Of a stretch of 64,000 nt of DNA, positions 3,980 through 53,200 are shown in pieces. The stretch spans positions 3,782,001-3,846,000 of the forward strand of contig NC_047026.1 of NCBI RefSeq assembly GCF_902652985.1, written 5' to 3'. How positions within the stretch are numbered: position 1 is the stretch's first letter; every line of letters starts with the position of its first letter. The position numbers and the translations under genes were made by a program. The stretch comes from Pecten maximus (lineage: Eukaryota). The notes below the pieces were generated by a model. The model worked only from the letters and a program-made list of their open reading frames with translations, was not told the origin of the DNA and did not search any database.

Positions 3980-6900
3980 CCCGACAGAGGACGACAGTGT
4001 TAGTCACATGTCACGTGGTATTTTCTCAAAGAAGTATAAAGAAATTAATTTCCAAACAAACTTTTATAAATTGTATTTTCCTTTATTAATGCTGGTACCT
4101 CCTCGCTACCAGCGTTTGACAAACGACGGGGGCGCCACTGATTTGGTCACGTGCTTTCCGACAGCACACCCGGTATCCCCGACGCCCGAAGCACACGTGA
4201 CCTTTATAAGTCAACAGGTGTATTTTCCTGCGCGCCACCTGTTGGCGGATTCTAAATATACGAGCGTACTTGGAAACAATGGCTACCACCTCAGGTGAAA
4301 TACGTTTCCCTTTAGCTTTACCTACACGTTCTCTGTTCAAAGACTTCCGGGTGTTCTTGGTTCGCTTTCTGTCATCAGTGCTATGACGTGGTTTTGTCTG
4401 CAAAATTAGACACGAGGGCATGAAATGCAATGAATTGAATAACAACTTGGATGATATAAGTACATGTATACTGTATAGTTAAATTTAGTATTTCTAAGAA
4501 AAATGTAGAAAAAAATGTTTATTTTGTTTCTGGAACTATTAAATTTCAGAACACTATTCAGTCAAAAGGGCGTTTAAAGTTTTGGGTTACTTTCATGAAT
4601 GCTAAATAGTAATATGATTATCAGGGACCAATGCTGGACACCACAATAACAGATTTTAAGATATGAAAGATTTTAAAATATACATATTTATAAATAAATA
4701 TAAAATGTGTTATTATGTAAATTTATCAATATTGTCTAGGCCATTGAATGTTGTATTGTTTAATTGTATATTGGAAGAGGGATTTTATAAGTTGCAAAAA
4801 AACTTGTGCCCTATCCTTTTGTTCAAAAGACAATAAAATAAGTTTTAACTGAAAACCACAACAACCATTTAAGTGTACATTGGTTCGTATATCATCACCA
4901 GTGTTGGGTTTTAAGCATGCAGTTTCGATGACTACAATGTCGCCTTCATCAGATACATGGCCAGTGAAGCATAGTCTGTTCATCAAATCCTTTGAAAAGA
5001 AAATGTTTTAAAATAGTGGAGATTTTATTTCATTGCATATTTTGTTCTCAACGATATTTTGTTTTTGTTTCATTCTTTTTAAATCCTAACGCAGATTGCA
5101 TTTGATCTTGTACGTAATTAAAAATATATAAATAAGTAAACATAAAATAAATAAATAGATAAAAAAATAAATAAATCAAAAAATACAGGTATGACGGTGT
5201 ATGTTGATGAGACTAATATGATATACATTGTATGTTTGCTACTGAAATAAGCTACCAAGTAATAAATAAATGTCCGAGTTTCGTGTTCCGTCTGTTATCT
5301 AGTATTCTAGACGTCTCTTTTTAGTTCATTGTACAATAAAATTGGTCGATTATCAAAGAAAATATCCTAAGGAAATTAGGCTTAACAACGATACAGTTCC
5401 CTATGCATGCCGCTGTCGTGCATTTTTAAAACGACTTTTCAGAAACAGGCTATACGACGAATCCGTCATTGTGTCGTCTGCTCCTGTAGTTTTGTGGCGG
5501 AAATTATGCATCAGGAACAGAGGCAGAAAGAAACTATTGCCAATTTGACATTAAAAAATTCCCCAAATAAAGATTAACGAAAACGTTCGGCATTCAAGTG
5601 TCAAAAAGATTAGTCCGTATTTTGGAAGATGACAGGATGAAATGCTGACATAGCCAACGCATTGAAAACCACAGAGACAAGCATGGAATCAATTTCACAG
5701 AATGAAAGATGCGAGTTGAGTGGGCTTGCCGCGAACATTCCTGTCAACAGATGTCTCCATATCAGATTGAATTCAAGAAATAATTATCGAATAACAGGGA
5801 AACAAATAAAATATAAGGTAAGTGACTTTATTTTACAGATCCAAGATCCTCAACAAACCGCCGCCATATTGAAAATTGTGACCGCAGCATTCTGTCCGTT
5901 TGAGGTGAAATATAGCTTGTACACGTGACTCAAGCTGAACTATTTTATAATAACTAGAGCTGTCGTTTATGAAATTGATGTATGTGACAGTTCAGTCTTA
6001 AATGACAGTAGCAGGTCTCTTATTCACTTTTAAGTACACAAAATAACCTAAATGTGTTTTTAATAACTTCAAACGGTGTACGTCGAGTGTTCTATTAAAC
6101 CAAGTTACGTATCAATGAGGCAACACGGGCCATATAAACACTCTTTCGGCTATAAGTGATCAAAAATACCACATATAAAAATAATGGCCTTGCATTTAAT
6201 GTATATTCACAAGATATTCTAAACCAAACTTTAATAAGATGTGATGTTTTGAACGAGTAGCTTATGTGAAATTTCACAATTAGATTTTTTTTTCTATTTA
6301 TTTATTTATTTTCTTTTTTTTTTTACTGAACATGCTTATGGGAATCGAAGAAGAACGTCTAGCGATAAAGTCAACATTCTATATATACTATATAGTGACG
6401 ATGACCTTGTTCAAAATCATAAATGACTTTCCCTCATTTTGTTTTTAAAGCGTCGCGCTTTTAATTCGTACCGTCACAAACAGGAGTTGTTGCCCTTACA
6501 AAAGCGCCCCCATGTGCGGATTTTTATTTGATTGAAAATAATTTTATGCTTGACAGTTATAACGTTCTCATTTAAAATGATATTATCACGTGTCTTTGCT
6601 GCCAAATAAAAATGTAAACAAATATATAAAGACCATTCACGGTTAAAGGTGGGAAAATATTCCTTCCATATACAGTACTAGTACAAATATTGATGGCGAG
6701 CACAGCGACAGTTTAACGATTTCTATGTGAATTAGATCAGGGGCATGAACATAAGACAAAAATATCGTTTTGAAAGAAAAAATAAGATTATTCAAAAAAA
6801 TATAATCATAAGGATGTATATTGTATCATGAGCTGACTGCCAAATGATTGTAAATCCTGTACATATCAAATGTATGTTGTCAGAATAAGTCTGTACAGAC

Positions 6901-10347: not shown

Positions 10348-10418
10348 CTAAACCCGGGACATCAGGCGCTGGAGGAATAAGGAAAGAAGAACAGCCACCA
10401 ACGAAATAGAAAATCCAG
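10348..10418 (-). CDS. CSRP terminal coding exon, GPI-signal-like hydrophobic tail
   Basis: Strong acceptor ccttgtttcgttttcag|CT. Reads (A)GFSISLVAVLLSLFLQRLMSRV then TAG; phase 1 matches the previous donor. Confidence 0.72.
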
Positions 10419-13400
10419 CTGAAAACGAAACAAGGACAAGTGTTAATCACGTGTCGGGTAAGCGGGATATTTTTTTGGTGAATAATCATGCACATAAAAA
10501 CCCAGACAGCTAACAGACGAAAATCCTTCGTCGCCGTATTTGTTACAGTGATCATGAAACATAATGAATTATTACATGTACCTGAGATAATGCCGCGACG
10601 TAAGTTATATGAAGCACACAAACATGCCAACCACCCATGTCCCTGGCGCGCGCCATCAGCTGGTAAATAATAATATATGTTGACCCACCACACCAGCAAA
10701 AAAAAAACGCCATCTCATTCCAGGAAGCTACCGAACCTTAAATATGCGTATTTGATATTATGTGTCGATGCATGCGTCTTAAATAGTATACAGGCGCTCA
10801 TAACGAAACCAGTCAAAACACCAAGGTTCGTTTTGAAATGAGTTTTAAATGATTAAGGGAGTGGTTTGAGGGAGTGGTTTGAGGGAGGGAGGGGCTTGAG
10901 GGAGTGGATTAAGGGAGTGGTTTGAGGGAGCGGTTTGAGGGAGTGGATTGGGGAAGTGGTTTGAGGGAGTGGTTTGAGGGAGTGGGTTGAGGGAGTGGTT
11001 TGAGGGAGTGGCTTGAGGGAGTGGTTTGAGGGAGTGGTTTGAGGGAGGGGCTTGAGGGAGTGGATTAAGGGAGTGGTTTGAGGGAGTGGTTTGAGGGAGT
11101 GGTTTGAGGGAGTGGCTTGAGGGAGTGGATTGAGGGAGTGGATTGGGGGAGTGGTTTGAGGGAGTGGTTTGAGAAAGTGGATTGAGGGAGTTGTTTGAGG
11201 GAGTGGTTTGAGGGAGTGGTTTGAGGGAGTGGTTTGAAGGAGTGGTTTGAGGGAGTGGTCTGAGGGAGTGGATTGGGGGAGTGGTTTGAGGGAGTGGTTT
11301 GAGAAAGTGGATTGAGGGAGTTGTTTGAGGGAGTGGTTTGAGGGAGTGGTTTGAGGGAGGTTTGAGGGAGTGGTTTGAGGGAGTGGATTGGGGGAGTGGT
11401 TTGAGGGAGTGGTTTGAGGGAGTGGTTTGAGAAAGTGGATTGAGGGAGTGGTTTGAGGGAGTGGTTTGAGGGAGCGGTTTGAGGGCCTGGTTTGAGGGAG
11501 TGGATTGGGGGAGTGGTTTGAGGGAGTGGTTTGAGAGAGGGCTTTGAGGGAGTTGTTTGAGGGAGTGGTTTGAGGGAGTGGTTTGAAGGAGTGGTTTGAG
11601 GGAGTGAATTGATGGAGTGGTTCGAAGGATGGTTTGTGGGAGTGGTTTGAGGGAATGGTTTGAGGGAGCGGTTTGAGGGAGTGGTTTGAGGGAATGGTTT
11701 GAGGGAGTGGTTTGAGGGAGTGGTTTGTAGGAGTGGATTGTGGGAGTGGTTTAAGGTAATGTGGTGATTGGTAATGTACTTAGCATTCAGTGAGCTCAAG
11801 TATCGTTAGCTATGATGAAGTGATTATGAGTAAATCAAGAATGGAACAAGTGAGTTTACTCAAAGTTGGAATGGAGCAAGTGAGCTTAAGTTTACTCAAA
11901 GTTGGAATGGAGCAAGTGAGTTTGAGTTAACTCAAAGTTGTAATTGAGGAAGCGAGTTTAAGTTACTCAAAGTTGGAATAGAGGAGGGAGTTTGAGTTAC
12001 TCAAAGTTGGAATGGAGGAAGCGAGTTTGAGTTTACTCAAAGTTGGAATGGAGGAAGTGATTTTGAGTAAATTTAGAATTGAGAGAGTGAACTTGAGTAA
12101 ATCTAGAATGGATAGAATGAACTTGAGTTAAAATACATAATTTATTTTCGGTAAAATTTACATTGGGTCACCGAGTCTGAGTTAAGTTAGAATTGGGGAG
12201 TTAATTTGAGTTATTTTGTTCGGCGTTTAGCATCCCCAAAATGACCGAGGTCATATATAGTTTGTGTGTTAACGAACTCGCCCACAATGACCGAGGTGAT
12301 ATGTAGTTTGTGTCTGTTAACGAACTCACCCACAATGATTGAGGTCATATGTAGTTTGTGTCTGTTAACGAACTCGCTCAAAATGACCGAGGTCATATAT
12401 AGTTTGTTTCTGTTAACGAACTCATCCACAATGACCAAGGTCATATATAGTTTGTGTCTGTTAACGAACTCGCCCACAATGACCGAGGTCATAAATAGTT
12501 TGTGTCTGTTAACGAACTCGTTCACAATGACCGAGGTCATAAATAGTTTGTGTCTGTTAACGAACTCGCCCACAATGACCGAGGTCATAAATAGTTTGTG
12601 TCTGTTAACGAACTCGCCCACAATGACCGAGGTCATAAATAGTTTGTGTCTGTTAACGAACTCATCAGCAATGATATAAAAGACGGATCTTATGTATATT
12701 ATATATTGTTGGGTATGGTTTCTTTGCTGAGCGCCTGTTACTATATAACTAACTACGAACACAATGTCAGTATATAACTTACTCCTGTGGGCTTTACGAC
12801 ATTGTAGACTTTCGCTGTAACAGTAACATGATTGTACACAAATTTACAAAATCATCACCAAATGGACATATGATAACTGCATGCAAGATGAAAATCTCAA
12901 AGAACATAAAAATGAATGATATGATGACGGAATCCCTGTACCAATATACGCCAGACATATGACTCCTTAACCCAGCTTGATCTGACCAAGCTACGTTGAA
13001 CGACAGCAATTTACTCCTGTAAAAGGACATTTAGGGGAGATATTCACCATCTTATTTTCTTCTGACATCTTTATACAATGGAATTATATGTCATGAATGG
13101 AACTGAAACTATAATATGTGAGCAGTCACGCGCTGAATCCCAAACGACATGACCTTGATATTGGACAAATAGTAAAAAAGTACACCATGACTGCATATCA
13201 TATTACAATTTCGGATGGGCGAACAAAGATCAACCGATTTAAAAAAAATCTGCATTGTCATTATAGCTTCTAATACTACACTGTATTTCTATCCAGCAGA
13301 CAAGTTCGTATGTGGAGCATGACGTTCTGAAACGAGACAGTCTATGGCGGTGTGGTGGGACCTTAAAATTCTATCCTTACCTGCCCGACAGATGGCAGTA

Positions 13401-16400
13401 GGCGTGTACACGCCTAATTTTGAGTCCTCGCGCATCACCATTGAGTGGAGGTCCGACCGCATTTCTTCAGCATTCGATCCTGATAAGACAAAAAATATTA
13501 AAACTGCTGACATTTTCATAACGTTTTGACGTCAAAATAATTGGCTGACATATAAGAATGGCTATGTACGGTTGTATACTCTCCCCATACATCTACATGT
13601 ACTTCGTTTCAACTAGCATTCGCCCGCTCAGTAATCTTGTGATTGACGATTATTATAAATTTTCATTACTATTAGGGTACGATTGTCATATTTTTTTATT
13701 TTTTATTTAATGTTTCCTGACTACTTTTGATAATCACCAACAAAATACTCTTTGCATTCGCTAATAGGTATACCGACCAAGACATTGGCTAAGGGGTGTG
13801 CCAACCTAGACATTGGCTAAGGGGTGTGCCAACCTAGACATTGGCTAAGGGGTGTGCCAACCTAGACATTGACTAATGGATGTACCTTACAATTATAAAC
13901 TACACCTCCGGTCAAAAGGTCTTCAACTATATATTGCAATGACTTTCAAATCCCATTAATTTCCGTTAGGCGTGCACGGGATATAGAAATAACTATATCT
14001 TCTTTACACCTATGTCGGTATGAATATAGGTGTAGCTACCTGTAAACATGACGTCCACGTCCACACAACCGGGTCCGTCCGACATCTGCATCACCGCCAT
14101 GTTGTACGGCCGGGATTGAAGCGCGGCAGCGACTGTTGCCACCAGAGCCGACCTATCGGTACAGACACGTGACATTATCGATATCACAATGAAACAATGA
14201 CTGATAATGACATACAATTACTCAATATTTTCTTTTTCCCCAATTAAAGTTATGTTTCCGTCTCCTTTATATACTTTTGTCTATTTATACAATAGAATAG
14301 TACATGAGTTATCTTCCCCTTTTACATACTAATTGGCACTAGTTTCTTTCTACTGTGCATTTAAATTTTGTCATGTGACCGTTCAAGGGAGACAATACAA
14401 ATATCACAAATGGCAGGTGGTCTCTTAGCCCGAGTTTCCTCTAGCCCTGACACCACCACCAGACATGGTGTCAGGGCCAGAGGAAACTCGGGCTAGTGGT
14501 CTCTTAGTCCATGTTCAAGTATCTAGTATTTTGAATAGCACCGAGGGGGGATATGGTCACATATAAGATGGAGTCTTTTAATTCAGGGGATCACTTAGGC
14601 AGGTCTAATTCTTTACAATGAAACCTGCCTAATCCGACACCATGGATGAATGTGCATACATGTATATACCTATATGATAAGAATGGTTATCTATCCCTTA
14701 TCTATCATACATTTGTGTATAAACATTTGAATTATCTGCCCCTTGCACATACATGGATGTATACATATTTATATCAACAATATAATAATCTTGTCACCTT
14801 TCATCATATTTTATAATACTTACTTATCGACCATGGTTGTACTGGAATGGAAACTCATCCTCTCCGTGTAACTGTTTTCCGGTATGATGTCGCCACACAC
14901 GAACCTTGGGCCGCCATTATTGGCTTGGTGTACGACTATAGACCGACCGACGACTGGAGGAGACAGTAACAACAAGGTAAAATGTGTGTCCAGTGATTCT
15001 ATACATGTTTACATTTAATATGAGATTTGACAGAAAGATCATCACAGCATCTTTAAAATATCTTCACTTGCGAGGCGTGACTAAATGACAACAGATTGGA
15101 TCCGGACAGTTTCGGAATAAATGTAACCTTTCTGACAATACGTTACATCATACACACTTCTCACGTGTAGTGTAATAACAGATTACACATACTTGAAAAA
15201 ATAACATTTAACATTTATTTACTGATTACCCTGATATGATCACCAACATAAATATGAATGTTGATTTTGTTTCTGTACAGGGTTTATCGCCGAACCCTCA
15301 GTCAGGGCAGTTTGAGACGGTTTGTCTTTATAGTACATGGTGGCTACCGAGTGACATCACCGGACGGGCCATGATACACAACCTACCATTGACCTTGACC
15401 TTCACCAGAGGTTGTATTGATCCCAATATCTACCGACTGAGCCCTCGCAGCTTCTCATTGAAGTTATAAACTGCATTCAAATCAAGAAATATTTGCTGTT
15501 GCTGTTTACTGGTGTGGTATCTTATTTTTAAAAACCCAGTTTACATTCAAGAAGAAGAAGAAGAAGAAGAAGAAGAAGAAGAAGAAAAAGAAGAAATATT
15601 TCTTCGATCAAAAGGCACTCGTTGCCGAGCTAAGACATGTTGACTTGCTAATCTCACCTCCGAAGTCGTCGATGATATTGAGGTTGACATCGGTATAGAA
15701 TCGCTTGCCATCTCCGATGTCATACACGGCTGTTTTAGAGGACAGGTCACCCGCTTCACACCGTAGGGGATTGTAAGGGGAACACTCGGTGTAATTAGTC
15801 TGTATACACAAACAACATTTTAAAAGTTGTATACACTGTCTACAGAAATTATCCTAATTTATCTTAAATAATTCCCCTGTGATGATGTCATTTGGGGTTT
15901 AACTTAAAAGACTTGTCTAGAACAATAGTTGTCACAGGACAACATAGCTCTCGGGTTGAAATTCAGAATTCGTTTTTTTAAAGTAGGTCAAATGCCATTG
16001 TCAATGTCAGCAGGCGCGCAAAATTAGTTTCAACAAACATACAAAATATGTACTATGGCCAAGATTGAAGTTTGAAAGTAGGTCAAATGTCACATTCAAG
16101 TCTAGCAGGCCAACAAATGAAGTACCAATGGAAATGATTTGTGACTAGGAACACACATGGCAAACAGGAGAGCCGCCTTATCTCATAGAGTTAACATACT
16201 GTGACGAAGGTAACATTTTTCGAAGTATGTCAAAGGTCACCGTCAAGGTCTACGGGTTCGTGAATGTAGTAGTGCCAATAGAAAGGTCTTGTCACAAGGA
16301 ACATACGTGGCAAATATAATTTTTTTTGTCTACATTCAAGGTAGGTCAAAGGTCACGGTGAAAATCAACAGGTTCGTTAATGTAGTATTAATAGAAAGAT

Positions 16401-19400
16401 ATTGTCGCAAGGAATACGCATGTAAAATACATTCGTTCTATCCTCATAATAAGTAAAAGAACACTTTTATAAAACAAAAACGTTTAACTTAGCTTTATAA
16501 ATAGTTCCCCGGTATTTCGTACCGTCTAGCTAAAATGGCATGACTTTAGTTTGAACTTTAATAGCGGTAGTTATCGCCCCTGCATACGTACCATGTCGAC
16601 CATGAAGGGATTGTAGTGTGGACCGGCACTGTTGCAGTCTCCTGTCATTGGCTTTTCATGCACGTGCCATCGATGACCTCTGGACTGCAAAATAACGTTA
16701 ATACTTATTCCATTAAATCACATACAACATGCATGTAAAATGTCGCTCAAACTGTATATGATAGATTTTATTTCAAGCAACCATACATTGCACGTCCGTG
16801 TATTAAACACAATCAATATCTACATATAATATGCTGCTAATGTTTTGGCCTAAAGAGTAAAGCGCTTATACCTTTTTCGAATCTGGCTGTTTCTGATTAT
16901 TTTTATATTCGCTGTATATAGATAGGATGAACTGGACACGGACTTTTTTTTACATTTCATTAATGATATATTATTCTGAACAGGTGTTGGGTCTGAAGCC
17001 AAAAGCAGATCATGCTGTGCAAAATCAGGTTTAAAATTGTAGACGAACAGACTAAACCAAAATCAATAGTACATACGTATGGTAACACAGGGACCAGGTA
17101 TACGTGTAAATTCTCAATTATTTGTACACGTGTGCTTTATTTTGTAGTTTGGGTGGACTTTTATCTTTAAAATATAATTAACTTGGGGCAGGGGGTTTCT
17201 ACGGCGCCATCAATGGCGGTCAAAGTGATGGCAGACGAATGTCATTCTAGATAGTGGACACTATCTCGTTATCATGTTTAACGCCCGTCAAAATAAATTA
17301 TCAACAATAGGGACCGATTCAAAGTTTTTGTGTCGAGGAATTTCCAGTGGATGTGATTGCGATCACAACAGTTCTTCAATAGTACCGTGGGTTTGTAACG
17401 ATTTAAACGTATTTTTATTACAATGTCTACACTTAGGTTGAACTAAGACCTTTCATTGACTGTTACACGCTAAGAAAGTTCTCCTTAGGCGAGCTGTAAG
17501 GAAGTAAAGCTCACAGGGGCTTGGCACGATTTATATATATATGTATATAGTATACTATATACATATATATATGGACTATCATTTGGAAAATCGTGCCAAG
17601 CCCCTGTGGTAAAGCTAGTATCTTATCGGAGTGACATACATCTCGGTCAGTCTCGAATGGATACATGTACAGGTTGGGGTTGAATACACTGTAATAAAAT
17701 TATATTGATTTAACATAAAAAGCACAGGCATTCCGATAGTACACAAGGATTTAAATGCATTCGTGATGTTCATTGTGGTTTTATTCAGTAGAAATTAAAC
17801 GCGTTGTATTTGTCAAGAGCGAGCTTTTCTCTCTCTATCCTTAACGAGGCTCAGCTGAATTCAAATGCTGTGTCTATATTTATCATTAACAACATTAATT
17901 CCTATTATTCATTTGTATGTGACGTCACATCATTGTTCTGCCATCTATTGCAGTTTCGACACACGATTTGCATAAATTCCGAAATTTACTTAAAATACAG
18001 ACGGGAAGTCGAGAAAATTGTACACAGCCACAACATGCACAAGAGAGAGAAATAGTTTATCGCCTTTGTGCTGAAAAGAATCTTTAAAATTGACAAATAC
18101 ATTTGTTTACAATATACAACATCTTTAAAATGTAAGGATTACAAGATGAAAAATACACATGCAGTTAGTGCAGTCATCGTTGAAAACTTTAAGTACATTA
18201 TACGTGGCAATATTCAACACAAGACGTCACAGAGCAATCAATATCAAATACACAGAAAAGAGCAGAGTTCTCAGAGAGACATAACTATTTATCGGGACCA
18301 TTAAATAACGATTTCTGTCGGACAGACTGACGTAAATAACACATGGCACAGGGAAATTTACCGTCTGAGGACAATTTAAACTTATTCAAATGTATACTGG
18401 ATTACAGGTATTATTGTGGGAGATTCAAGACACATGATGCGTTTGTATCGTGCATTCACGTAGAAAATAGCTAGATTTACAAGTTTAATTATATTACACG
18501 TGGCGACAGAGAAGCTTAAATGCATGTCCTTTGTGACATCTCACAAACTGCTATCACCAACATAATCTCAACATTGAGCAGGAAGTACAAAATAAAGACA
18601 AATAGTAAAGTAAAAAAAAAAAATAGATATTATATATCAACGGTATTATGTTATATGACCTTATCCAAACGCGTCACAACATGTTCCAAATAATTTTATT
18701 TTCAAAAACCGACGGTATAATGCAAATTTTCTTTTGAAGTTTTTATTTTCGTGTTTAGAATAAAATTACGAAAATGTATTATCCTGAAAATAAAACTAAT
18801 ATAGAAAATTATTATTCGTTTCATTTGATGTCCGCGAAAAATAAATATTGTTTCAAACTTTTGGTAAAACTAAGAATCGGCACATTCGTCTGAACTTTGT
18901 ACTGTATTGCGGGACAGTCAAAATGTTAAGAATTGTATTGAGGTTTTCCTTATTGTATACATTAGGCTTATACAAACCTAAACATAGTATGGCTCATCTC
19001 TGAAGATGAAGCCACACCAACATGTGAATTGTGATGTCAAATACTGCCCAATGTCATAGATGTTTTTTTGTTTGTTTTTTTTAATTGAAGAATCAACTCG
19101 AAATATCAAATTTCCGGGGTAATCCCCCGAAAACACCTGATGGTGTAAATTTCACTGAAATGAAAAGAACACCCAACACTATGTTAAGGTGTAATACAGA
19201 CTCTTGAAAGATGATGTTTCTTTTAGACATATACAGGTGTACATTTCAACTGGTGTCTACTTTCACTTCCTACTCCCTCGTCTGTGAGTCTGTGGGTACA
19301 TGTATATGGCGACTTTGGGCATTGCTCTTTCTAGGGATGAATGTACCGAGACTATAAGCCTTGTATATATGTAAGGACGGACTCTTGGAGTCTTGAAACA

Positions 19401-22400
19401 CTTTTCTTTTAAAATCTTTTGTCCATATTTCAGGAAGTCTGCCTACCTTGTGTAAGCCTTCATGTGTGCAGCGGTAGACTATCCTAACAGTATTTACTGC
19501 ATTAGCCTAAACCCGAAAATCTTCTTTCGCTGAGTCTGTGACAACAGCTTCCAAGTCTGTTGGAGTTTCAGCTCCTCACAACTCTCTCGGGTATATGACA
19601 GGTTGCCTCATAGTAACAGTTATCAACATTTTTCTAATATAGTTTAATTTTTCTAATATTTTATTTTACATTTCAGTTTTTATCTTCTAATGATGAAATA
19701 TCTTGTTTGGTTTATTTTGTTTAACGTCCTATTAACAGCCAGGGTCATTTAAGGGCGTGTCAGGTTTGGAGGTGCAGGGAAGCCGGATTACCCGGAAAAA
19801 TGTTGTAATTCCTGTTCAAAATGCATGTTGGTTCCGTGTTTGCCTTTTCCCTTCTCTGAGAAACTTCCTCTTGTTTTTTTGTTGGGACGAGTGCCTCCTT
19901 TTCGTACAATTCGTGGATTCCAATCAGTGATTGCCAATATATTGGCTTTTCGGGGCTCTCGGATGTAGGCGTATACTATGTTAGCCAATGCATTATCATG
20001 ATGTGACTCAATCGGAACACCTCGCCTCCGTCTGCGAACGTAGTTTCGTAGAAAATGACGAGGGGTTCCGATTGGATGTGACTTTGCACTTCGGTGTCCT
20101 CGGTCATTATGGGTGATTAACTGTCAGTGGAATCTCTCGAGTCTCTTACTCGTTCAATTTGAACCTTCTTCTTTGTCATCGCATAAGAATCTCTCTCTAG
20201 GTGATTTTCCTTGTGACGTGTGCTTTTGGCACGTCCACAAAGTGACATCCAAGCCTTCAGTAGTACAGGCTTTTGCCCTTTTCAGTATTGTTGTCTACAA
20301 CCAGTTCTTAATTACTAGTCCTCGTCTGATAAGCTACACTATAAGCTAGCAGCACCAAACCTTGTAAGTGTAGCGGAACTAGACTGGGTCGATCATCGGC
20401 GATCAGGTAGCTCAATTGGTAGAGCATCAGGCTAGTATTCGGAGGTCCGGGTTCGAGCCCCGGTCTCGACGTGCATTTCCCCTCTCCTATTACATATGGC
20501 GCCCAACTAAATACCCACGGAGGTGGTATAGGGTATCGTGTGTGTCTCCGGGGTCGAAGATTTTGTTGAGGGAGGGAGGAATGTAGCGAAACTGGATTGG
20601 GTCGATCATCGGCGACCAGGTAGCTCAATTGGCTAGTATTCGGAGGTCCGCGTTCGTACCCCGGTCTGGACGTGCATTTTCCCTCTCTTATCATATAAGT
20701 ACCAGTTGTATTAGACTAGGGTTTTACTGAACGTATCTTACTGGCAGTAATTCAGTTGTTCACTTCTCCATAAAAATACTGTTGTGCCAAGTCTGTGCCT
20801 TCAGTACTAACAGAGGGTATGGTACATGCATTACCATTTTTTATTCTTGCATATTAATCAGCGTTTTCTTATTATAATTGACGACAACGCTATAGGGCTC
20901 TATACTGTACCTCCGACAAAGAAGATAAACTGATTCTTTTAAAGATCTATTTTAAGTTAAGTTTCACATTTTTAAGCCAAAGAGCTGCATACACAAAGAC
21001 ATGGTATTGTGAAATATGACATTAGGAAGACAATACTTACAATCAACGTGTTGTCTGATTTGTATTTCAAATCTATAAGTATCCCTGTGTCACTCAGTCC
21101 ACCATCCGGGTACTTGTACTGGGTCTGTAACATAGCAACGGGATACTCTGTGATTTATCTACCAACGTCTGGGCAACGGCACTGAGTTTATATCACAGTA
21201 ACGGAATTATTATGCTAATTACCAACAATCCATCTCTGTGCACGTAACAAAGTTATTTCCATCGTACCAATTAATTGATTATTGTGCAAGTACACTTTGT
21301 GCCGATAAAGCTATATCTTCATCTTCAGAATCCCGAATGCTTTAACTCAATGACTTATTACTATTCCATCGGAAATTCGAAACTTGTTTGTATTAATACT
21401 TCTTTGATAAAGTATATGTCAATTCAAGACTTTGACCTTTGACCTCTCACACTCCATTCTTAGTGAACTTTCAACTTTCACATTGATCTTGACCTTTGCA
21501 GCACGTACTGTTCCTTTATGTTTTTGTATTGATCAACTGTAGCAAGATTATTTAACAAACAAACAAAAAAGAAGAAGATATTTGACTTATATTTTGAAAG
21601 CATTTACTGGACACAAGGAAAAACTGAAAGTTTATTTTCACCAATACACTTACCATTATAATGCTACCAACTACTTCTCCTTTGAACTCGGTCTTTGCTG
21701 TATACATCTTGCCACCGGAAGTAGTGGTGTCCTCCACGATATTTCCGCACTTCCACCGGGTTCCGTTGTCGAAATGGACGACGACAGAGCGTCCGACCAC
21801 ACTGTGGCTCCCCCTGACGGGCAAATTTGTATCGACACCAGTCCAATCTACACTGGTCTTGCCATCAAGCATATGGTTATATTTTCCACTTAAGTCGCCA
21901 ATTTCGTACATATCATCTGTTTTGTCAGCAGGAGATCCAACAATAGAGAGGGGATTGTAATGGCCGCCAACTGCAGCGGCGGAACACGAAGCGGAAGAGG
22001 GGACCGGGTAACTGTGAACGTGATACCCGCTAGCCATCCCATCAAGTCCATTTAGATTCACATTGACGGTCGTCGGCCCGTCCAGAAAGCCTGGAGTGTT
22101 AGAATTAAACACAGTTTTGCCAGCGTATGATTGTTGCGACCAGTCCATTATCTTCGTCAGTCTGGCTGGAGTATTGTAGAGGTTTGCACATGCCAGTCGA
22201 GGGGCCCCAGAATCGGCATTGTGTATAACTATTGATCGACCTAACACGCTGTTTGGCCCCGAAAGAGGCAGGTCGACGTCCGTGAAGAACATCCGGGACT
22301 TTCCTCGGCCCGGTGTCCTTACACCAAGCTTTCCGTGTTTCCCGGACAAATCGCCGACCTCGCAGCGTAACGGATTATTCGGGCTACATTGAGTTGAGTA

Positions 22401-24404
22401 ATCGCCCCCTAAGTCGACAGAGTAAGGGTTATAGTGACCACCGACGGATAGACATCTTTGGGAGACGTCCATTCCGAAGGCTTCGTTAATACGATCAACG
22501 TGGATGTGCCAGTTATGATTTGCTGTGGAAGTCGGCGTAGCAGAATTACTGTAGTCGAGCTCCATATAAATCTGGGTTTCCGAAAGCGGCCCGTTCATTT
22601 GGGGCTGGCGAAGGAAAATGTAACCGATGACCGGATACTTAAAGGTCGCTACTGCCTGTATGACACTGGCCTCGGCTTCGATTGTAGCACAAACCCAACG
22701 AGATCCATCCACTTGTTTATGGATTACCACAGAACGCCCAATCACACTGTTAACACCAAATAACGGTAAGTTGGAGTCCATCTTAACAATGTTCAATTCT
22801 GTCAGCCCGTTCAGCAATCCGTATTTGTTACTGAGATCCCCAACCTCGTATTGGTCGTTGGTGCCCGCCCCCGGGGCTGGAAGAGCCCCGGCCACACCAA
22901 ATGGATTAAAATGGCCACCGACATACTCCTGGCCACATATCTCTTGACCTTTTATCATCTTAAGGGGAACAGGGTAGTTGTGGATATGATATCCGCCTGC
23001 CATGTTAGCCAAGCCCGTGAGATTAACGCTTACTTCCGTCCAGTCGAATGGAGACTTCTGGGAAAATGATACAGTTCCTTTGACGTCATCCCTACTTATC
23101 GTAACCTTTGCATTCCGTGTGGTATACTTGATGATTTTAGCGCAGGCCAAAGGAACCGATTGTGGTGTTTCAACAACTAGAGTTTTACCCTCGGCCGAAT
23201 TCATAGCTCCAATACTCAACGCCCTGTCCAGAAACAGCTTTGCCCCTCCCCCCTTCATTACCGACACGGTCACAGGGTTATGTTTTCCACTTAAATCCCC
23301 AGCCTTGCAGTTTTGTTGAGCCGACATAGAACATCCTGATCCGGCTGACGACGTTGGATTGAACACATTACCCAGGTTCTGGCACCTGCTAGCTACATTA
23401 TCGCTGTCCTGAATTTCTTTATCGTAAATAGACCATTTCAGAAAAAAATCGGAGGCACCAGTGGTATTCTTAATGTGGAAAAGGTCTGTGTATATAGATA
23501 CTGGGGCGGTGTAGTCGGCGGAGGGCTGACGGAAAACTACCTCTCCGCCAACAGTGTCTTTGAACCGTGCTGTCATGGTAACTTCGTCATCGGTCTCTAA
23601 GGTGGCGCAAGCTAGTCCCGAACCTTGCCCGCCCATCAGAACGAGGGATCGACCTAAATGGTAAATAATTCACTTAGAAGTATAAAAAATGTTTAACAGC
23701 TAAACAAATTTACAAGGAACGGTGACACGGTCGAAAAACTGTTAATGTAAACAAAAACAAACAAATTCAATTAGAAGTATAAAAAATGTTTAACAGCTAA
23801 ACAAAATTACAAGGAACGGTGACATGGTCGAAAATATTTTAATGTAAACAAAAACAAACAAAAAAGAGTAATTATGTATGTTCAACTTGGATAAACATGT
23901 CAACTGGAAACATTTTCAAAAGCAACTATTTATCGAAATTTCTAAATGATTAAATATTGTAACTTTATCCGGTAAGTTTATACTAACCGTATAAGGTGTT
24001 CACATCATTTAGGTCTGTAGGCGCGATAAAAGACCCCACAGGTACCGTACTTCCAAGCGAAGTGTATCTAAAATAAAAAAGGAATAGTCTTAAAGGGGAC
24101 ATATACTATCACATTCATTTAATTTGTGTACTGAACCGACAAAAAATACCACAAGAAAATACATCAGCATTTGTAAGCCTACGTAACGCAACATTGTCTC
24201 GATACCTCGGTCCAAGTTGACTACATCGATCGGCAATATCGAGCCGGACCGGAAAAGTCCGGAATTCCCACGTGGATCCAAAACCAGTAAGTGTATAGGT
24301 GATCACAGTGTTCGTTCCGGGCGACGGCTGGGAGAAGGTTACCGTCCCACGGGCACCATTAGAGTTGAATTTCGCCTTCAGAATCGTGGCTGACACCACT
24401 GGCA
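10348..24404 (-). CDS. Multi-exon gene: Cu-only SOD repeat protein (CSRP/cusr-like; extracellular multi-domain Cu/Zn-SOD family protein), ~1003 aa plus an unlocated signal-peptide exon
   Basis: Exons 24206-24404, 23988-24067, 21654-23653, 21041-21124, 16592-16684, 15658-15799, 14824-14953, 14040-14152, 13381-13479 and 10348-10418 join with GT-AG introns and consistent phases (1,2,1,0,0,0,1,2,1,1) into 3011 nt of open frame. Repeated SOD motifs HxH...GxH(F/Y)NP...ExGDLS...GRS(I/V)V(I/V)H...RxxC occur four times. Confidence 0.9.
10856..11755. repeat. 13-bp G-rich minisatellite (GAGGGAGTGGTTT)n in the last CSRP intron
   Basis: About 65-70 units; explains the spurious ORF 11065-11799. Confidence 0.97.
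11825..12130. repeat. Degenerate ~30-37-bp tandem repeat (TTACTCAAAGTTGGAATGGAG core)
   Basis: Core recurs about 7-9 times. Confidence 0.8.
12238..12672. repeat. 48-bp minisatellite x~9
   Basis: Unit AATGACCGAGGTCATAAATAGTTTGTGTCTGTTAACGAACTCGCCCAC; produces 16-aa periodic pseudo-ORFs on both strands. Confidence 0.95.
13381..13479 (-). CDS. CSRP exon (post-SOD C-terminal domain)
   Basis: Acceptor tttgtcttatcag|GA; donor GCAG|gtaagg. 99 bp, phase 1-1. Reads SNAEEMRSDLHSMVMREDSKLGVYTPTAICRA. Confidence 0.8.
13780..13875. repeat. 28-bp tandem repeat x3.5
   Basis: AGACATTGGCTAAGGGGTGTGCCAACCT at 13780, 13808, 13836 and a partial copy at 13864. Confidence 0.9.
14040..14152 (-). CDS. CSRP exon (post-SOD C-terminal domain)
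   Basis: Acceptor taccgatag|G; donor ACAG|gtagct. Phase 2 to 1 fits both neighbours. Reads SALVATVAAALQSRPYNMAVMQMSDGPGCVDVDVMFT; GC-richer than its flanks. Confidence 0.8.
14426..14495. mobile_element. 70-bp hairpin MITE, TAG..CTA termini, 9-bp TSD
   Basis: TIR TAGCCCGAGTTTCCTCT(A/G)GCCCTGACACCA; TSD GTGGTCTCT at 14417-14425 and 14496-14504. Confidence 0.85.
14824..14953 (-). CDS. CSRP exon (end of fold 6)
   Basis: Acceptor tctcctccag|TC; donor GATAA|gtaagt. Reads VGRSIVVHQANNGGPRFVCGDIIPENSYTERMSFHSSTTMVD. Confidence 0.92.
15549..15595. repeat. (GAA)n microsatellite
   Basis: Direct reading. Confidence 0.9.
15658..15799 (-). CDS. CSRP exon
   Basis: Acceptor gtgtatacag|ACT; donor GGAG|gtgaga. 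Reads TNYTECSPYNPLRCEAGDLSSK...RFYTDVNLNIIDDFG. Confidence 0.92.
15920..16450. mobile_element. Degenerate Helentron/HINE-like element with internal tandem repeats
   Basis: Recurring AAGTAGGTCAAA(T/G)GTCAC...TTGTCACAAGGAACA motifs at ~100-130-bp spacing. Confidence 0.45.
16592..16684 (-). CDS. CSRP exon (Cu ligands of fold 6)
   Basis: Acceptor attttgcag|TCC; donor ATG|gtacgt. Reads SRGHRWHVHEKPMTGDCNSAGPHYNPFMVDM. Confidence 0.92.
17512..17608. mobile_element. 97-bp MITE with 21-bp TIR and 8-bp TSD (hAT/P-like)
   Basis: TIR CACAGGGGCTTGGCACGATTT / AAATCGTGCCAAGCCCCTGTG; TSD GTAAAGCT at 17504-17511 and 17609-17616. Confidence 0.85.
19703..19800 (-). mobile_element. SINE 3' fragment
   Basis: GTTTAACGTCCTATTAACAGCCAGGGTCATTTAAGG tail shared with the copy at 59535. 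Confidence 0.8.
20009..20074. mobile_element. 66-bp imperfect hairpin MITE with 9-bp TSD
   Basis: CAATCGGAACACCTCG...CGAGGGGTTCCGATTG; TSD GATGTGACT at 20000-20008 and 20075-20083. Confidence 0.75.
20369..20695 (+). mobile_element. TRIM (miniature LTR retrotransposon) with tRNA-derived LTRs (Ajax-like; Cassandra analogue)
   Basis: LTR1 20369-20494 (TG..CA) and LTR2 20582-20695; PBS TGGCGCCCAAC at 20497-20507; PPT GAGGGAGGGAGGAA at 20568-20581; TAAG TSD on both sides; A-box TAGCTCAATTGGTAGAGC and B-box GGTTCGAGCCC in LTR1. Confidence 0.88.
21041..21124 (-). CDS. CSRP exon (84 bp)
   Basis: Acceptor gttacag|ACC; donor ATT|gtaagt. Reads TQYKYPDGGLSDTGILIDLKYKSDNTLI, parallel to RQPQMNGPLSETQIYMELDY in fold 4. 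Confidence 0.88.
21654..23653 (-). CDS. CSRP 2-kb central exon (SOD folds 2-5 and start of fold 6)
   Basis: Within the 694-aa ORF 21552-23636. Acceptor catttag|GT CGA; donor ATAATG|gtaagt. Contains YHIH/GGHFNP/YEVGDLS, WHIH/GGHYNP/CEVGDLSGKHG and YHVH/GGHYNP/YEIGDLS. Confidence 0.95.
23674..23862. repeat. ~97-bp intronic tandem duplication
   Basis: TTAGAAGTATAAAAAATGTTTAACAGC...AAACAAACAAA at 23674 and 23771. Confidence 0.9.
23988..24067 (-). CDS. CSRP exon (80 bp)
   Basis: Acceptor ttttttattttag|A; donor TACG|gttagt. Reads YTSLGSTVPVGSFIAPTDLNDVNTLY and joins phase-correctly to give LYGRSLVL. Confidence 0.85.
24206..24404 (-). CDS. CSRP exon (end of signal peptide plus N-half of degenerate SOD fold 1)
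   Basis: Acceptor ttgttgttacag|TG; donor CCGAG|gtatc. Reads PVVSA-TILKAKFNSNGARGTVTFSQ...RCSQLGP; GTVTFSQ is the SOD beta-strand-2 motif. Confidence 0.85.
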
Positions 24405-24603
24405 CTGTAACAACAATAAACACATTTCACTTGTTTTCTATATACATGTATATATATTATTATGTTTTTCTATAGCAACGGAGTTGACCATAAGTTTTAA
24501 AAAACTTCGAAAAAGTTAGTTTTTTTCGATAATTACACAGTAATAATGAGTAACTACTTAATTACATGTCTCGCTCGTCACGCGTCGTCATAATATATAT
24601 ACA

Positions 24604-50295: not shown

Positions 50296-53200
50296 TTTTT
50301 CGCCGTATATTTAGGCATAGAAAGCACCCATTCAGTTAATTTCCCTTTTCCATCATAATCTGAATAATGTAGTTTACATGATACATCATCGACAATTGTA
50401 TGTGTATGTGCAAACGGATGAGACGAACTAGTCGCCTCCCTAATTCCGGCATACACTGACCATAACTCATTACTGTAGACTAAGGTTCGCGTGCACTAGG
50501 TCGCGTGACACTTACTCACTTATCTACATAATTTGTAAACAATAGAATCTTCAAATTATAGTTTTCTCTGTACCTCTCATCTTTAAAACATTTTAAACGA
50601 AATTTCATATTCTGATAATAATCATCGTTAAAATATTCGTACAATGACTTCAAAGGAATTAAGCATATTTCATAAATTACAGAATAATCACTTTATTATA
50701 CAAACGTTACTTATATTATATATTATATATTATATATAATTACATAATGACGTCATATGTGAATATTTGCATAATTTTAGGATTTATGTCGAATAACAGT
50801 CATAAATCGCTCGAACCGGGAATTTCTCATTTTATGTCTTTGTCTATCAACACTGGGTGGTGTATTCAGAGTTTAATTAAAGTATGATATCCGTTTTAGC
50901 ATTTAGAATTCAAACATTAACATTTCAAACAACCGAACATACGGATCACAGACTTAAATTGTATAATGTACTTGACTTCAGTTTGGACACGGATTTTAAA
51001 GACTCCGGTTGACCCAGACATAAACCGGCAAGGTGTAATTTATCTCAATAAAACTCATGGCCATGAACCGCCGATAAACAGCATGTTTACCAGTTAAATG
51101 TATATGTTATTTTCAATGGAAATCCATTGAAGTCCTCTATATGTTTAATAAATAAATATATATATGAATTTTCATAACTAAATATGACGATATTCTATAT
51201 ACACTACGTATACCCCATCCCACCCCACCCCATAATACAGCATGAATTACACTATTTTAAAACACTAGGTCGTTAAATATATATTTGGAAATGAAAATCT
51301 GTCTAGACAGAAATAAAGAAGTTTTCAGACACGTGCATATCATCATCAAATCCAGCAACAGGTTTTAACTAAAATGTATATTATGATTTGTATGCCTTGT
51401 TAAATTTTATTATGTAAATATCAATATATGAACTGTATCAGAGGAAAAAGTGTTGATAAGTTGGAAAAACTTGTACCTAATCCTCAGCTCAATTTTGGGG
51501 CAAAAAATATGTCTAGTGCATAGTATCAAACATTTTCTGGAATGTGGAAAAAATGCTTCGTATTCCCGTAAACGACACAGCATCACTTCTATGTTAAGTA
51601 ATTATCAGAGCTTTTAAAGCTGACAAAGTTGATCACAGGGATCAGATTTTTTTTACAGGCTATGTCAGGTAAGCTTCCGTGCATGTCTTCAAACAGCTTT
51701 GTTAGCTTCATGTGTAGTTTTATACTATTATATCGCACGAAATCATGTCGCTCTAGAGAAATTAAGATGTTATATAGATTTAGCACGGACCAGGATGTCC
51801 CTGTATGGACGAATGGGTTATGATTATCATAATTAATTTTGCCATATTTTCTTCAAGACTCTAAAGTTTGTTGAAAAAATAATTAAGCTTTGATTACAAT
51901 GATATTTTACTTATCATTTTACCTGAGATACATACTGGAAGTCAAAAGTCTGCCGTGTATAGCTTTATAACACCATACCGGATTCACATATAAACTGTCT
52001 TTCACACTGGAAGTCAAAAGTCTGCTGTGTTTTGCTAAATAACAATTTGCCAGTTCACGTAAACTATGGTTAGGTCTGAACTTTTATCACAACGATTTAG
52101 GAAATTCAAATTAGCCTTGTACGTATGGGACAACTGTCTACACTACATATTAGAAATAGGGCCCTGTGTTCCGAGTTTTTGTATACATTACAATGTATAT
52201 ATGTGTTAAACTTACATAATGTCATATCAAAGATCTGTAACATATTTAACGCTGCTCGAGTATATCTATTCATCTAGCAGTAAGATTTTGTTTGCTATAT
52301 AAAACTTTCTGACGCTACAGGTGCATGATAGATGTAGCATTTCACTTTCGAGTAAGGCACGGTTAAAATTTTAACGTCTTTGTAATAATTTAATTGTCAT
52401 GTGTAAGTATCCACGAACGAGTTTACATTACAATCATGCTCTTAAGAGGACAAGGTTTGCTTAGCTCTTGAATTCGACAGCACATATTACCGTTTATAAA
52501 AGCCGTATGCTAACAACAATGTGTTGTATATACTCACGGAAAGTCAGGCTAAGTAAACAGGTCAAATATACACGGGCTTCTGTCCTCGGCATAATGAAGT
52601 ATTCCAATCAGCGAGTATGTGACATGGAGTCCGAGAACACAGCGTGGACGATGGGAATGTAAATATAAGTCCAGCACACTACAGTACGTAACTCCGTAAG
52701 TGGTTATGACACTGGGCAGTGAGAGAGCGATAATTCGGAGATTTCACTGATAACAGTCCCGATTACAATAGGTATTATCAAACTGCGGGGACGTTATATA
52801 GGTAAATATCACTGGACCATGTCACACCGGCTCATGCAGTTCACGAGGCGTGCCTGCATACCTTTGCTGTGGCGCTACGGGCGAATAATATAGCCCGATT
52901 TTTTGTTGCTAGTATATATATCTGTATATGGACTTACTAGCACGTTGTACGTGTGTGCACATATCACACACAGACACACCGGTCACAGCAGGGTCATAAC
53001 ACCCATCAACAGACGGACGTCATCTTACAAGTACTGACTCAAAGTCAAGTCTGTAATCTTACAAAAAAATAATTAATTGATGTCTAAATTTATTTAGATT
53101 TATTCAACAGATAACATTTTTAGAATGTATAAAAGAAAAAACAAAACTTCCTTCTAATCACATGATATTGTATGCATGGCATTGCATATCGTATATGTAT

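What the first reader, a model, noticed from the sequence alone, without database searches (positions are those of the whole stretch)
10348..24404. Six-fold Cu-only SOD repeat protein: two metal-less plus four catalytic-looking SOD domains, GPI-like tail
Seen: ten spliced exons give ~1000 aa with six SOD-like folds. Folds 3-6 keep all four Cu histidines (HxH, GxH(F/Y)NP, GRSxVxH), the disulfide cysteines and the Arg143-equivalent (SRWVC, PRLAC, TRWKC, PRFVC). The Zn ligand His80 is replaced by Glu (YEVGD, CEVGD, YEIGD, CEAGD), His71 is absent and the electrostatic loop is deleted. Known: this is the Cu-only SOD signature of fungal SOD5 and of animal CSRPs, which are usually described with four SOD repeats. 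Seen: folds 1-2 keep the scaffold (GTVTFSQ/GEVVFRQ, RCxxLG, GRSLVL/GKTLVV, LACA) but lack the Cu histidines and the Arg. Inference: a surface-tethered, Zn-independent superoxide-to-H2O2 array with a non-catalytic N-terminal binding or scaffold pair; its function in molluscs is largely uncharacterised.
Basis: partly seen in the sequence, partly recalled or inferred. Interest (0 to 1): 0.78.

Follow-up and report, generated by a model that had tools for sequence, protein, structure and literature searches.

The report
Scallop copper-only SOD repeat protein gene
This is the great scallop's copy of a known animal cell-surface protein built from six superoxide-dismutase-like domains, four of which keep a copper site; it is real and expressed, but its design is already in print.

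Summary
One coding exon was missed: the signal-peptide exon at 52538-52592, 28 kb upstream. Domains 3-6 keep the four copper histidines, the Glu/Asp pair typical of copper-only SODs, the Arg and the disulfide cysteines. Domains 1-2 lack all four histidines and the Arg. Pfam and PDB sequence searches do not detect domains 1-2, but profile-profile comparison shows they are homologous to domains 3-6 (probability 98-100%).

RNA contigs from four runs of four studies confirm the junctions I could lay, including the one into the GPI-type tail exon.

This is not new. CSRPs with six repeats and two copper-less N-terminal repeats are described in a 2026 review, recombinant oyster CSRP has SOD activity (2025), and the Zhikong scallop orthologue was published as Cu/Zn-SOD4 (2019).

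Three things are added here:
- Odd and even domains form two classes, so the array is a two-domain unit present three times.
- A conserved, unannotated module of about 87 aa lies between domain 6 and the tail.
- Alternative 3' exons replace the GPI signal with a very basic, four-cysteine tail that is conserved in another scallop and seen in RNA.

The parts
52538..52592 (-). Coding exon 1: start codon and signal peptide (aa 1-18 plus the first base of codon 19).
   Evidence: Exact match to P0001/P0122 residues 1-18. GT donor after 52538. The N-terminus is conserved in three other scallop orthologues.
24206..24404 (-). Exon 2: first two thirds of domain 1 (copper-less).
   Evidence: As a single exon its best PDB hit is a Cu/Zn SOD, but not significantly (E 0.097).
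23988..24067 (-). Exon 3: middle of domain 1.
   Evidence: AG acceptor, GT donor, split codons fit the RefSeq protein.
21654..23653 (-). Exon 4 (2000 nt): last strand of D1, all of D2 (23594-23124), D3 (23123-22668), D4 (22667-22167) and D5 (22166-21720), and the start of D6.
   Evidence: Open frame of 694 aa. Pfam Sod_Cu E 7.3e-45, 3 stretches. 100% identical to P. maximus LOC117338803. D3 aligns to human SOD1 and to C. albicans SOD5 chains.
21041..21124 (-). Exon 5: domain 6, strands before the His-x-His motif.
16592..16684 (-). Exon 6: domain 6, His-x-His and the third copper His.
   Evidence: Loose ends of contigs at 15800 in runs X1 and X3 read exactly into 16593-16622.
15658..15799 (-). 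Exon 7: domain 6, extra Cys pair and the Glu/Asp motif.
   Evidence: Joint 15658/14953 in 4 of 4 runs.
14824..14953 (-). Exon 8: end of domain 6 (fourth copper His, Arg, last Cys; D6 ends at 14874) and start of the C-terminal module.
   Evidence: Joints on both sides in 4 of 4 runs.
14040..14152 (-). Exon 9: C-terminal non-SOD module, including the invariant Cys957.
   Evidence: Joints in 4 of 4 runs.
13381..13479 (-). Exon 10: end of the C-terminal module (Cys996). This is the branch point of alternative splicing.
   Evidence: Joint 14039/13478 in 4 of 4 runs.
12783..12814 (-). 32-nt alternative mini-exon. Including it abolishes the GPI-tail reading frame.
   Evidence: Isoforms X1-X4. Joint 13381/12814 in runs X1 and X4.
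10348..10418 (-). Terminal coding exon of isoform X5: 23 aa hydrophobic GPI-type signal plus stop. The 3' UTR continues below 10348.
   Evidence: Joint 13381/10418 in runs X5, X3 and X4 (3 of 4). The tail is conserved in Ylistrum and Argopecten orthologues.
4867..4989 (-). Alternative exon of isoforms X2/X3. It shifts the frame of the last exon to a 5-aa end.
   Evidence: No RNA evidence was obtained here because it lies outside the stretch laid.
4086..4397 (-). Alternative terminal exon of isoform X1: 103-aa basic tail with four Cys, plus stop.
   Evidence: 30 K+R against 5 D+E, pI 11.6. 53% identity over 94 aa to the end of the A. farreri protein P0003. A contig in run X1 reads from 12783 straight into 4397-4368. 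One copy in the genome.

Best explanation
The locus is the single Pecten maximus orthologue of the animal Cu-only SOD repeat protein (CSRP, called cusr in fish). A signal peptide sends a chain of about 107 kDa into the secretory pathway. The chain has six tandem SOD-like domains joined by short linkers.

Domains 3-6 each keep a complete copper site: four His, the active-site Arg and the disulfide. They have the copper-only arrangement, with Glu in place of one zinc His, no second zinc His, the Asp retained and loop VII shortened. Each should therefore convert superoxide to O2 and H2O2 through Cu(II)/Cu(I) cycling without zinc. This is inferred from the residues and from the measured activity of an oyster CSRP, which is a related protein and was not tested here as the orthologue.

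Domains 1-2 are diverged, copper-less copies that most likely serve as scaffold or folding partners (inferred). A module of about 87 aa that is not SOD-like, with two conserved Cys, follows domain 6.

The last 23 aa of isoform X5 are a GPI-type attachment signal encoded by its own exon. Alternative splicing through a 32-nt mini-exon removes that signal. In isoform X1 it is replaced by a 103-aa, strongly basic, four-Cys tail, which predicts a released or matrix-bound form instead of a lipid-anchored one (inferred).
For: Identity and family:
- The big exon is 100% identical to LOC117338803. 606 proteins scored E <= 0.001 among 8000 candidates. The 120 best listed (589-1181 aa, most about 1000) come from molluscs, brachiopod, echinoderms, hemichordates, amphioxus, arthropods, fish and axolotl, and include a fish protein named cusr.
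- Pfam Sod_Cu scores E 2.8e-58 with 4 stretches.

Active-site residues:
- D3 aligns to human SOD1, with Glu opposite the zinc His and Asp retained. It also matches C. albicans SOD5 (4n3t, E 5.3e-7).
- The homologous columns in D4-D6 carry the same residues.

Domains 1 and 2 (hhalign on sub-alignments of 85-89 orthologues):
- D1 against D3: probability 99.4, E 1e-21.
- D2 against D4: probability 100, E 1.1e-45.
- Control, C-terminal module against D3: probability 0.7.

Conservation:
- Of 89 full-length orthologues, 26 show the scallop's pattern of four His in D3-D6 only. 88 of 89 lack a full His set in both D1 and D2; the one exception has it in D1 only.

Expression and splicing (four runs from four studies):
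- Joints 15658/14953, 14822/14150 and 14039/13478 were seen in 4 of 4 runs.
- The GPI-tail joint 13381/10418 was seen in 3 of 4 runs.
- The mini-exon joint was seen in 2 of 4 runs.
- The mini-exon to basic-tail link was seen in 1 run.

Literature:
- Six repeats, N-terminal repeats without copper, and GPI-anchored or secreted forms (review section read).
- Oyster recombinant CSRP1 is active as an SOD (abstract).

Tail:
- 65 of 89 orthologues end in a hydrophobic segment.
Against: - No activity, metal content or localisation data exist for the scallop protein.
- As single sequences, D2 finds no SOD in the PDB (6 hits, all E >= 0.15, none an SOD) and Pfam does not report D1 or D2.
- Scallop D1 is short (108 aa), and in the self-alignment it lacks the stretch that holds the Glu/Asp motif, so it may be an incomplete barrel.
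- No GPI predictor was available. The hydrophobic stretch is short (about 14-16 aa) and is followed by seven partly charged residues, so a different fate of the tail is not excluded.
- All RNA evidence comes from assembled contigs, most from runs whose RNA nature is only guessed, so isoform ratios and tissues are unknown.
- Identity of the big exon (D2-D5) to named oyster CSRP hits is only about 45%.
Confidence: 0.88

Rival explanations
1. The protein is a CSRP in sequence but does not work as an enzyme. It would act as an extracellular copper buffer, a recognition molecule or a scaffold, as proposed for oyster dominin and for the copper-less CSRPs of moths and tardigrades.
For: The review notes that some CSRPs have no copper site yet are expressed and are predicted to fold alike, and that CSRP may act independently of ROS. 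Among 89 orthologues the number of intact sites varies widely; 15 keep only D5 and 1 keeps none. This suggests the scaffold is under selection apart from catalysis.
Against: All four sites in the scallop keep every copper ligand, the Arg and the Glu/Asp pair. This pattern is shared by 26 of 89 orthologues. The one mollusc CSRP that has been tested is active (abstract).
Confidence: 0.1
2. The hydrophobic C-terminus is a transmembrane or retention segment and not a GPI signal. Alternatively, isoform X5 is minor and the main product is the secreted basic-tail form.
For: The hydrophobic run is short and is followed by a partly charged end. In run X1 the mini-exon joint has the highest contig depth, 918.7. 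The only published scallop cDNA entry (A. farreri SOD4, 1115 aa, pI 8.82) is the basic-tail form.
Against: A run of 14-16 residues is too short for a typical membrane span (general knowledge). The X5 joint is present in 3 of 4 runs. The same tail is conserved in two other scallops, and a hydrophobic end is present in 65 of 89 orthologues. The literature predicts GPI anchors for CSRPs. Contig depths cannot rank isoforms, as the output itself states.
Confidence: 0.15
3. The gene model is an annotation artefact or a pseudogene: unrelated SOD-like exons joined by prediction.
For: The first intron is 28 kb. Five predicted isoforms differ at the 3' end, and one of them (X4) reads the GPI exon out of frame.
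Against: There are no stops in any exon, all splice sites are canonical, and the spliced contigs come from four studies. Orthologues of the same length and domain order occur across animal phyla, and the exon 1 peptide is conserved in other scallops.
Confidence: 0.02

Closest known systems
[quoted passage not shown] Crassostrea gigas/sikamea CSRP1
   Same: Length of about 1000 aa, with a signal peptide and six tandem SOD-like repeats. R1-R2 lack copper sites. R3-R6 have four His plus the Glu/Asp signature, a disulfide in every repeat and a short loop VII. The C-terminus is a GPI-type end.
   Different: Identity of the big exon (D2-D5) to named oyster hits is only about 45%. There is one locus in the scallop genome, against three genes reported per oyster species (abstract). 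The scallop gene also encodes a basic four-Cys alternative tail, for which I found no description.
Azumapecten (Chlamys) farreri Cu/Zn-SOD4 (MK374368, 1115 aa; Lian et al. 2019)
   Same: It is the scallop orthologue: 80% identity over the big exon, with a homologous basic C-terminal tail at 53% identity. Its pI of 8.82 compares with 8.76 for mature Pecten isoform X1.
   Different: It was published as a Cu/Zn SOD with 'quadruple SOD_Cu domains' and considered mollusc-specific (passages seen). The passages searched did not mention CSRP, Cu-only or GPI.
Fungal Cu-only SOD (Candida albicans SOD5, PDB 4n3t)
   Same: The active-site design matches: four copper His, Glu and Asp in place of the zinc site, truncated loop VII, and an extracellular, GPI-anchored location.
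   Different: SOD5 is a single domain of about 25 kDa, whereas this protein has six domains in one chain. Sequence similarity is modest (E 5.3e-7 for D3).
Classical Cu/Zn SOD (human SOD1; extracellular SOD3)
   Same: The Greek-key SOD family (Pfam Sod_Cu), the copper ligands, the disulfide and the Arg are shared. The basic tail of isoform X1 recalls the basic heparin-binding end of SOD3; this comparison is from recall, not from a call.
   Different: Two of the zinc histidines are missing and loop VII is cut from 26 to 9-11 residues between the last copper His and the last Cys (the SOD1 figure is recalled).

Membership tests
Animal CSRP | Several tandem Cu-only-SOD-like domains in one polypeptide of about 100 kDa, joined by short linkers | tested here: met
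   Pfam Sod_Cu gives 4 stretches on P0122. D1 and D2 are homologous to D3-D6 by hhalign, probability 97.9-100. The mature chain is 107 kDa.
Animal CSRP | [quoted passage not shown] | tested here: met
   D3-D6 have His at all four columns. D1 has E/R/R/M and D2 has S/Y/V/E. The same pattern occurs in 26 of 89 orthologues.
Animal CSRP | No zinc site: Glu at the position of one zinc His, no second zinc His, Asp retained (the E110/D113 signature) | tested here: met
   D3 aligns Glu opposite the zinc His of human SOD1 and keeps the Asp. Glu and Asp are invariant in D3-D6, and no His lies in the preceding loop.
Animal CSRP | Electrostatic loop (loop VII) truncated | tested here: met
   There are 9-11 residues between the last copper His column and the last Cys in all six domains. 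Alignments to SOD1 stop at that point.
Animal CSRP | Conserved intradomain disulfide pair in every repeat | tested here: met
   Both Cys columns are occupied in six of six domains and in 81-89 of 89 orthologues per position. Whether the bond forms was not tested.
Animal CSRP | Extracellular: N-terminal signal peptide, and a C-terminal GPI signal or secretion | tested here: inconclusive
   The N-terminus from exon 1 is hydrophobic. The end of X5 is hydrophobic (mean Kyte-Doolittle 2.62 over 13 aa), as in 65 of 89 orthologues. No signal-peptide or GPI predictor was available.
Animal CSRP | Beta-barrel fold of all six repeats | not tested
Only the published oyster model speaks to this.
Animal CSRP | Copper binding and SOD activity | not testable with these tools
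   Activity is reported for recombinant C. sikamea CSRP1 only (abstract).
Classical bimetallic Cu/Zn SOD (SOD1/SOD3 type) | A complete zinc site (three His and one Asp) and a full-length loop VII | tested here: not met
   two zinc His are missing in every domain and the loop is shortened.
Fungal SOD5-type Cu-only SOD | A single-domain enzyme of about 25 kDa | tested here: not met
   This protein has six domains in one chain. The active-site signature is nevertheless shared.

The most novel reading that the evidence does not exclude
One scallop gene makes two differently placed forms of the same four-site copper-only SOD array. Skipping a 32-nt mini-exon yields the lipid-anchored (GPI) form. 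Including it and splicing to a distant exon yields a form ending in a 103-aa tail of pI 11.6 with four Cys. That tail has no relatives outside scallops and would bind polyanionic matrix or shell or mucus components, much as the basic end of vertebrate extracellular SOD3 binds heparin. The splice point sits exactly at the predicted attachment site, so the GPI signal is a swappable cassette. Separately, the six-domain array is a two-domain unit present three times, and it carries a seventh, non-SOD module that the CSRP texts I could search do not describe.
Probability: 0.4. Interest if true: 0.45.

Novelty: new member of a known kind. Interest (0 to 1): 0.25.

Why it matters
CSRPs appear to be the only active extracellular SOD of bivalves, and their biology is barely explored. 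A checked gene model for the great scallop, with its isoforms, gives a clean starting point for expression and activity work in an aquaculture species. The isoform switch, if functional, would show how one gene places the same antioxidant array either on the membrane or in the matrix. The finding does not open a long-standing question, because the architecture that made it look striking has been published.

Tried and rejected
Searches that led nowhere:
- Pfam on the three small exon frames alone gave nothing.
- D2 as a single sequence against the PDB found no SOD. Exon 2 found an SOD only at E 0.097.
- The basic tail had no Pfam family and no word-search hit. That search also failed to return the A. 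farreri protein that BLASTP then matched at E 2e-31, so its blank is weak.
- The full-library search gave 2 hits, both long ankyrin-repeat proteins matched through 11 and 6 weak stretches. I reject them as summed repeat noise.
- The tail against the PDB gave only a ribosomal protein at E 1.1.
- The C-terminal module had no usable Atlas hit. In 47 orthologues no Pfam family other than Sod_Cu matched more than 2 members. It is not SOD-like.
- An SEA-like or ferredoxin-like fold is suggested only by the hydrophobic pattern and remains untested.

Ideas considered and dropped:
- A second CSRP gene in this genome: the big exon matched one place only, of 3 candidates scored.
- A nested gene in the 28-kb first intron: no ORF of 130 aa or more there had a Pfam match.
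- The very high depth at 14457-14496 is an intronic palindromic repeat and not an RNA of this gene.

Literature:
- Searches for alternative splicing of CSRPs found one incidental paper. Searches for P. maximus with copper-only SOD found none.
- The 2018 paper that named CSRP is not held.
- Supplements are closed. The review's Table S1, which lists species with CSRPs, may name scallops.


Full report
What is there.
The window has no N. On the minus strand a 694-aa open frame (21552-23636) matches Pfam Sod_Cu at E 7.3e-45 with three stretches. I searched this frame against all minus-strand stop-to-stop segments of 25 aa or more overlapping 9000-26500. It found four further pieces, at 15611-15853, 14823-15008, 24118-24426 and 16574-16717, with E from 1.8e-8 to 0.0011. 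A word-indexed protein search with the big exon scored 606 proteins at E <= 0.001 among 8000 candidates. The top hit, at 100% identity, is 'uncharacterized protein LOC117338803 isoform X2 [Pecten maximus]', 1055 aa. Its 90% cluster holds five RefSeq isoforms, X1-X5.

Gene model.
Outside the split codons at exon borders, isoform X5 (P0122, 1021 aa) maps exactly to the window in eleven blocks. All borders are AG/GT, and the split codons give the RefSeq residues (read by eye). The coding exons are:
- 52592-52538
- 24404-24206
- 24067-23988
- 23653-21654
- 21124-21041
- 16684-16592
- 15799-15658
- 14953-14824
- 14152-14040
- 13479-13381
- 10418-10351, with the stop at 10350-10348

It missed exon 1, the start codon and signal peptide, which lies 28 kb upstream. 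The exon 1 peptide is conserved in Ylistrum, Argopecten and Mizuhopecten orthologues. Whole-protein steps used the public isoforms by id.

RNA.
Of 24 runs listed, 20 hold the big exon or a part of it, from 9 studies; 2 of these are on record as RNA. I laid contigs of four runs from four studies on 10300-16299.
- Joints 15658/14953, 14822/14150 and 14039/13478 appear in 4 of 4 runs.
- The joint into the hydrophobic-tail exon, 13381/10418, appears in 3 of 4 (X5, X3, X4).
- The joint into a 32-nt mini-exon, 13381/12814, appears in 2 of 4 (X1, X4).
- Loose ends at 15800 in X1 and X3 read exactly into the end of exon 6.
- A loose end at 12783 in X1 reads exactly into 4397-4368, the basic-tail exon.

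These are assembled contigs. They show that the joined forms exist, but not their amounts, strand or tissue. They rest on the RefSeq model, canonical sites and orthologue continuity.

Domains and residues.
I cut P0122 by residue number into six parts and aligned them.
- D3-D6 share invariant His at four columns, Cys at two, a Glu and an Asp three residues apart, and an Arg three residues before the last Cys.
- D3 aligned to human SOD1 puts these His on the copper ligands, the Glu opposite a zinc His and the Asp on the zinc Asp. C. albicans SOD5 (4n3t) also matches, at E 5.3e-7.
- No His lies in the loop before the Glu in D3-D6.
- Only 9-11 residues separate the last copper His column from the last Cys in all six domains. 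The SOD1 figure of 26 and the SOD1 residue numbers are recalled, not from a call.
- At the four His columns D1 has E, R, R, M and D2 has S, Y, V, E. Both lack the Arg and keep both Cys. D2 has Lys where D3-D6 have Glu.
- D1 is short (108 aa) and has no counterpart of the Glu/Asp stretch.

Are D1 and D2 SOD domains?
Pfam reports only four stretches. D2 alone finds no SOD in the PDB; its 6 hits all have E >= 0.15 and none is an SOD. Exon 2 alone has an SOD as top hit only at E 0.097.

For a profile test I used the 125 stored proteins (the 120 best hits plus the five isoforms). I dropped the four other Pecten isoforms and every protein outside 950-1150 aa, which left 89. I cut the alignment at the scallop domain borders, keeping 85-89 rows per domain, and ran hhalign.
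- D1 against D3: probability 99.4, E 1e-21.
- D1 against D5: 99.0.
- D1 against D2, D4 and D6: 97.9-98.0.
- D2 against D4: 100, E 1.1e-45.
- D2 against D6: 99.9.
- D2 against D3 and D5: 99.1.
- Negative control, the C-terminal module against D3 and against D1: 0.7 and 0.3.

D1 and D2 are therefore diverged members of the same domain family.

Across relatives.
In the 89-row alignment the copper-site pattern equals the scallop's (four His in D3-D6 only) in 26 proteins. Nineteen keep D3-D5, 15 keep only D5, 13 keep D3 and D5, and 1 keeps none. One row scored a full set in D1, probably through misalignment. No row has a full set in D2.

Odd and even domains.
The hhalign scores pair D3 with D5 (E 1e-65) and D4 with D6 (E 1e-58) far above the cross pairs (about 1e-30 to 1e-33). 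D1 sides with D3/D5 and D2 with D4/D6. I built a tree of 90 domain sequences: six domains from each of 15 proteins that I hand-picked from the 89 for phyletic spread. It places each domain position as a group with the fewest possible label changes (5 for 6 groups). It also separates the 45 odd from the 45 even domains on a single branch, SH-aLRT 96. The AU test I had planned did not run. Even domains carry an extra Cys pair eight residues apart just before the Glu/Asp motif. The array is therefore a two-domain unit present three times, and this arrangement predates the divergence of the sampled phyla. Another first-stage note in this scan made the same suggestion; the tests here support it. 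The words 'duplicat' and 'pairs' do not occur in the 2026 review, and nothing on a two-domain unit turned up in the 2025 oyster paper. Figures, supplements and the 2018 paper could not be seen.

After domain 6.
Residues 912-998 are conserved; 87 of 89 rows cover at least 60% of the stretch. Cys957 is invariant and Cys996 nearly so. The module is not SOD-like. It has no Pfam family in the scallop or in 47 orthologues, where Sod_Cu matched 47 of 47 and no other family matched more than 2. It has no Atlas hit. The column pattern suggests strand-helix-strand-strand-helix-strand, but that is inference only.

Tails.
Exon 11 encodes just 23 aa: small residues and then a hydrophobic run (mean Kyte-Doolittle 2.62 over 13 aa). 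This tail is conserved in Ylistrum and Argopecten, and 65 of 89 orthologues have a hydrophobic end. This fits a GPI signal, as the literature predicts for CSRPs, but I had no predictor.

The mini-exon (12814-12783) shifts the frame, with these outcomes:
- Spliced to exon 11, it gives an out-of-frame 18-aa end (X4).
- Spliced to 4397-4089, it gives a 103-aa tail (X1).
- With exon 4989-4867 or 4989-4900 in between, it gives a short end (X2, X3).

The X1 tail has 30 K+R against 5 D+E, four Cys and pI 11.6. It raises the pI of the mature chain from 6.2 to 8.8. It is 53% identical over 94 aa to the end of the A. farreri protein, with all four Cys kept. That protein was published as Cu/Zn-SOD4, 1115 aa, pI 8.82 (passages). 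The tail is single-copy in the genome and has no credible relatives elsewhere.

What is known.
The 2026 review by Peterson and Culotta (sections 8 and 9 read) states several things:
- AlphaFold shows many CSRPs have six, not four, repeats.
- In C. gigas CSRP, repeats 3-6 have intact sites with the E110/D113 signature.
- CSRPs are GPI-anchored or secreted.
- CSRP appears to be the only active extracellular SOD in oysters.

Tan et al. 2025 (abstract and two sections read, plus passages) report three CSRP genes per oyster species, mantle expression and SOD activity of recombinant Cs-CSRP1. They still count four domains. Lian et al. 2019 (passages) describe the Zhikong scallop orthologue as an 'extremely long' SOD with four SOD_Cu domains. 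No paper held links P. maximus with copper-only SOD.

Verdict.
It is worth a low score. Three smaller points are not in the texts I could search: the two-domain unit, the seventh module and the swappable tail.

Surroundings.
The introns hold several minisatellites, a tRNA-like hit and a palindromic repeat. A decayed reverse-transcriptase frame lies at 62680-63588. The big exon matched only this locus in the genome.

Noticed in passing
window 14420-14508: An intronic palindrome with arms of about 30 nt. Contig depth there reaches about 29,000 in run X1, with 'goes back 39' joints and many unrelated loose ends. It looks like a short hairpin-forming repeat that is common in the genome or transcriptome.
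   Followed up: partly
window 10856-11756: A 13-nt minisatellite of about 69 copies, G-rich on the + strand (GC skew 0.56 in 10001-12000), in the intron before the GPI-tail exon. It creates long spurious ORFs in all three minus frames.
   Followed up: no
window 24639-25809: A 41-nt tandem repeat of 29 copies, just upstream of exon 2 in the 28-kb first intron. There are also a 48-nt repeat of 9 copies at 12235-12663 and a 36/105-nt array at 11851-12103.
   Followed up: no
window 20401-20471: An Rfam tRNA match (33.2 bits, E 0.0041) that ARAGORN did not call. It lies inside the stretch that another first-stage note calls a tRNA-derived TRIM (20369-20695), in the intron between exons 5 and 6.
   Followed up: no
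window 62680-63588 (-): A 302-aa frame with weak reverse-transcriptase and RNase H matches (E 0.0016 and 0.00049, both below the Pfam cut-offs). It is probably a decayed retroelement upstream of the gene.
   Followed up: no
window 10300-10456 and below: In run X5 one 3924-nt contig carries exons 7-11 and then about 3.1 kb more beyond 10300. The GPI-tail isoform therefore seems to have a 3' UTR of roughly 3 kb. A one-base insertion after 10333, relative to the assembly, is seen in all four runs.
   Followed up: no
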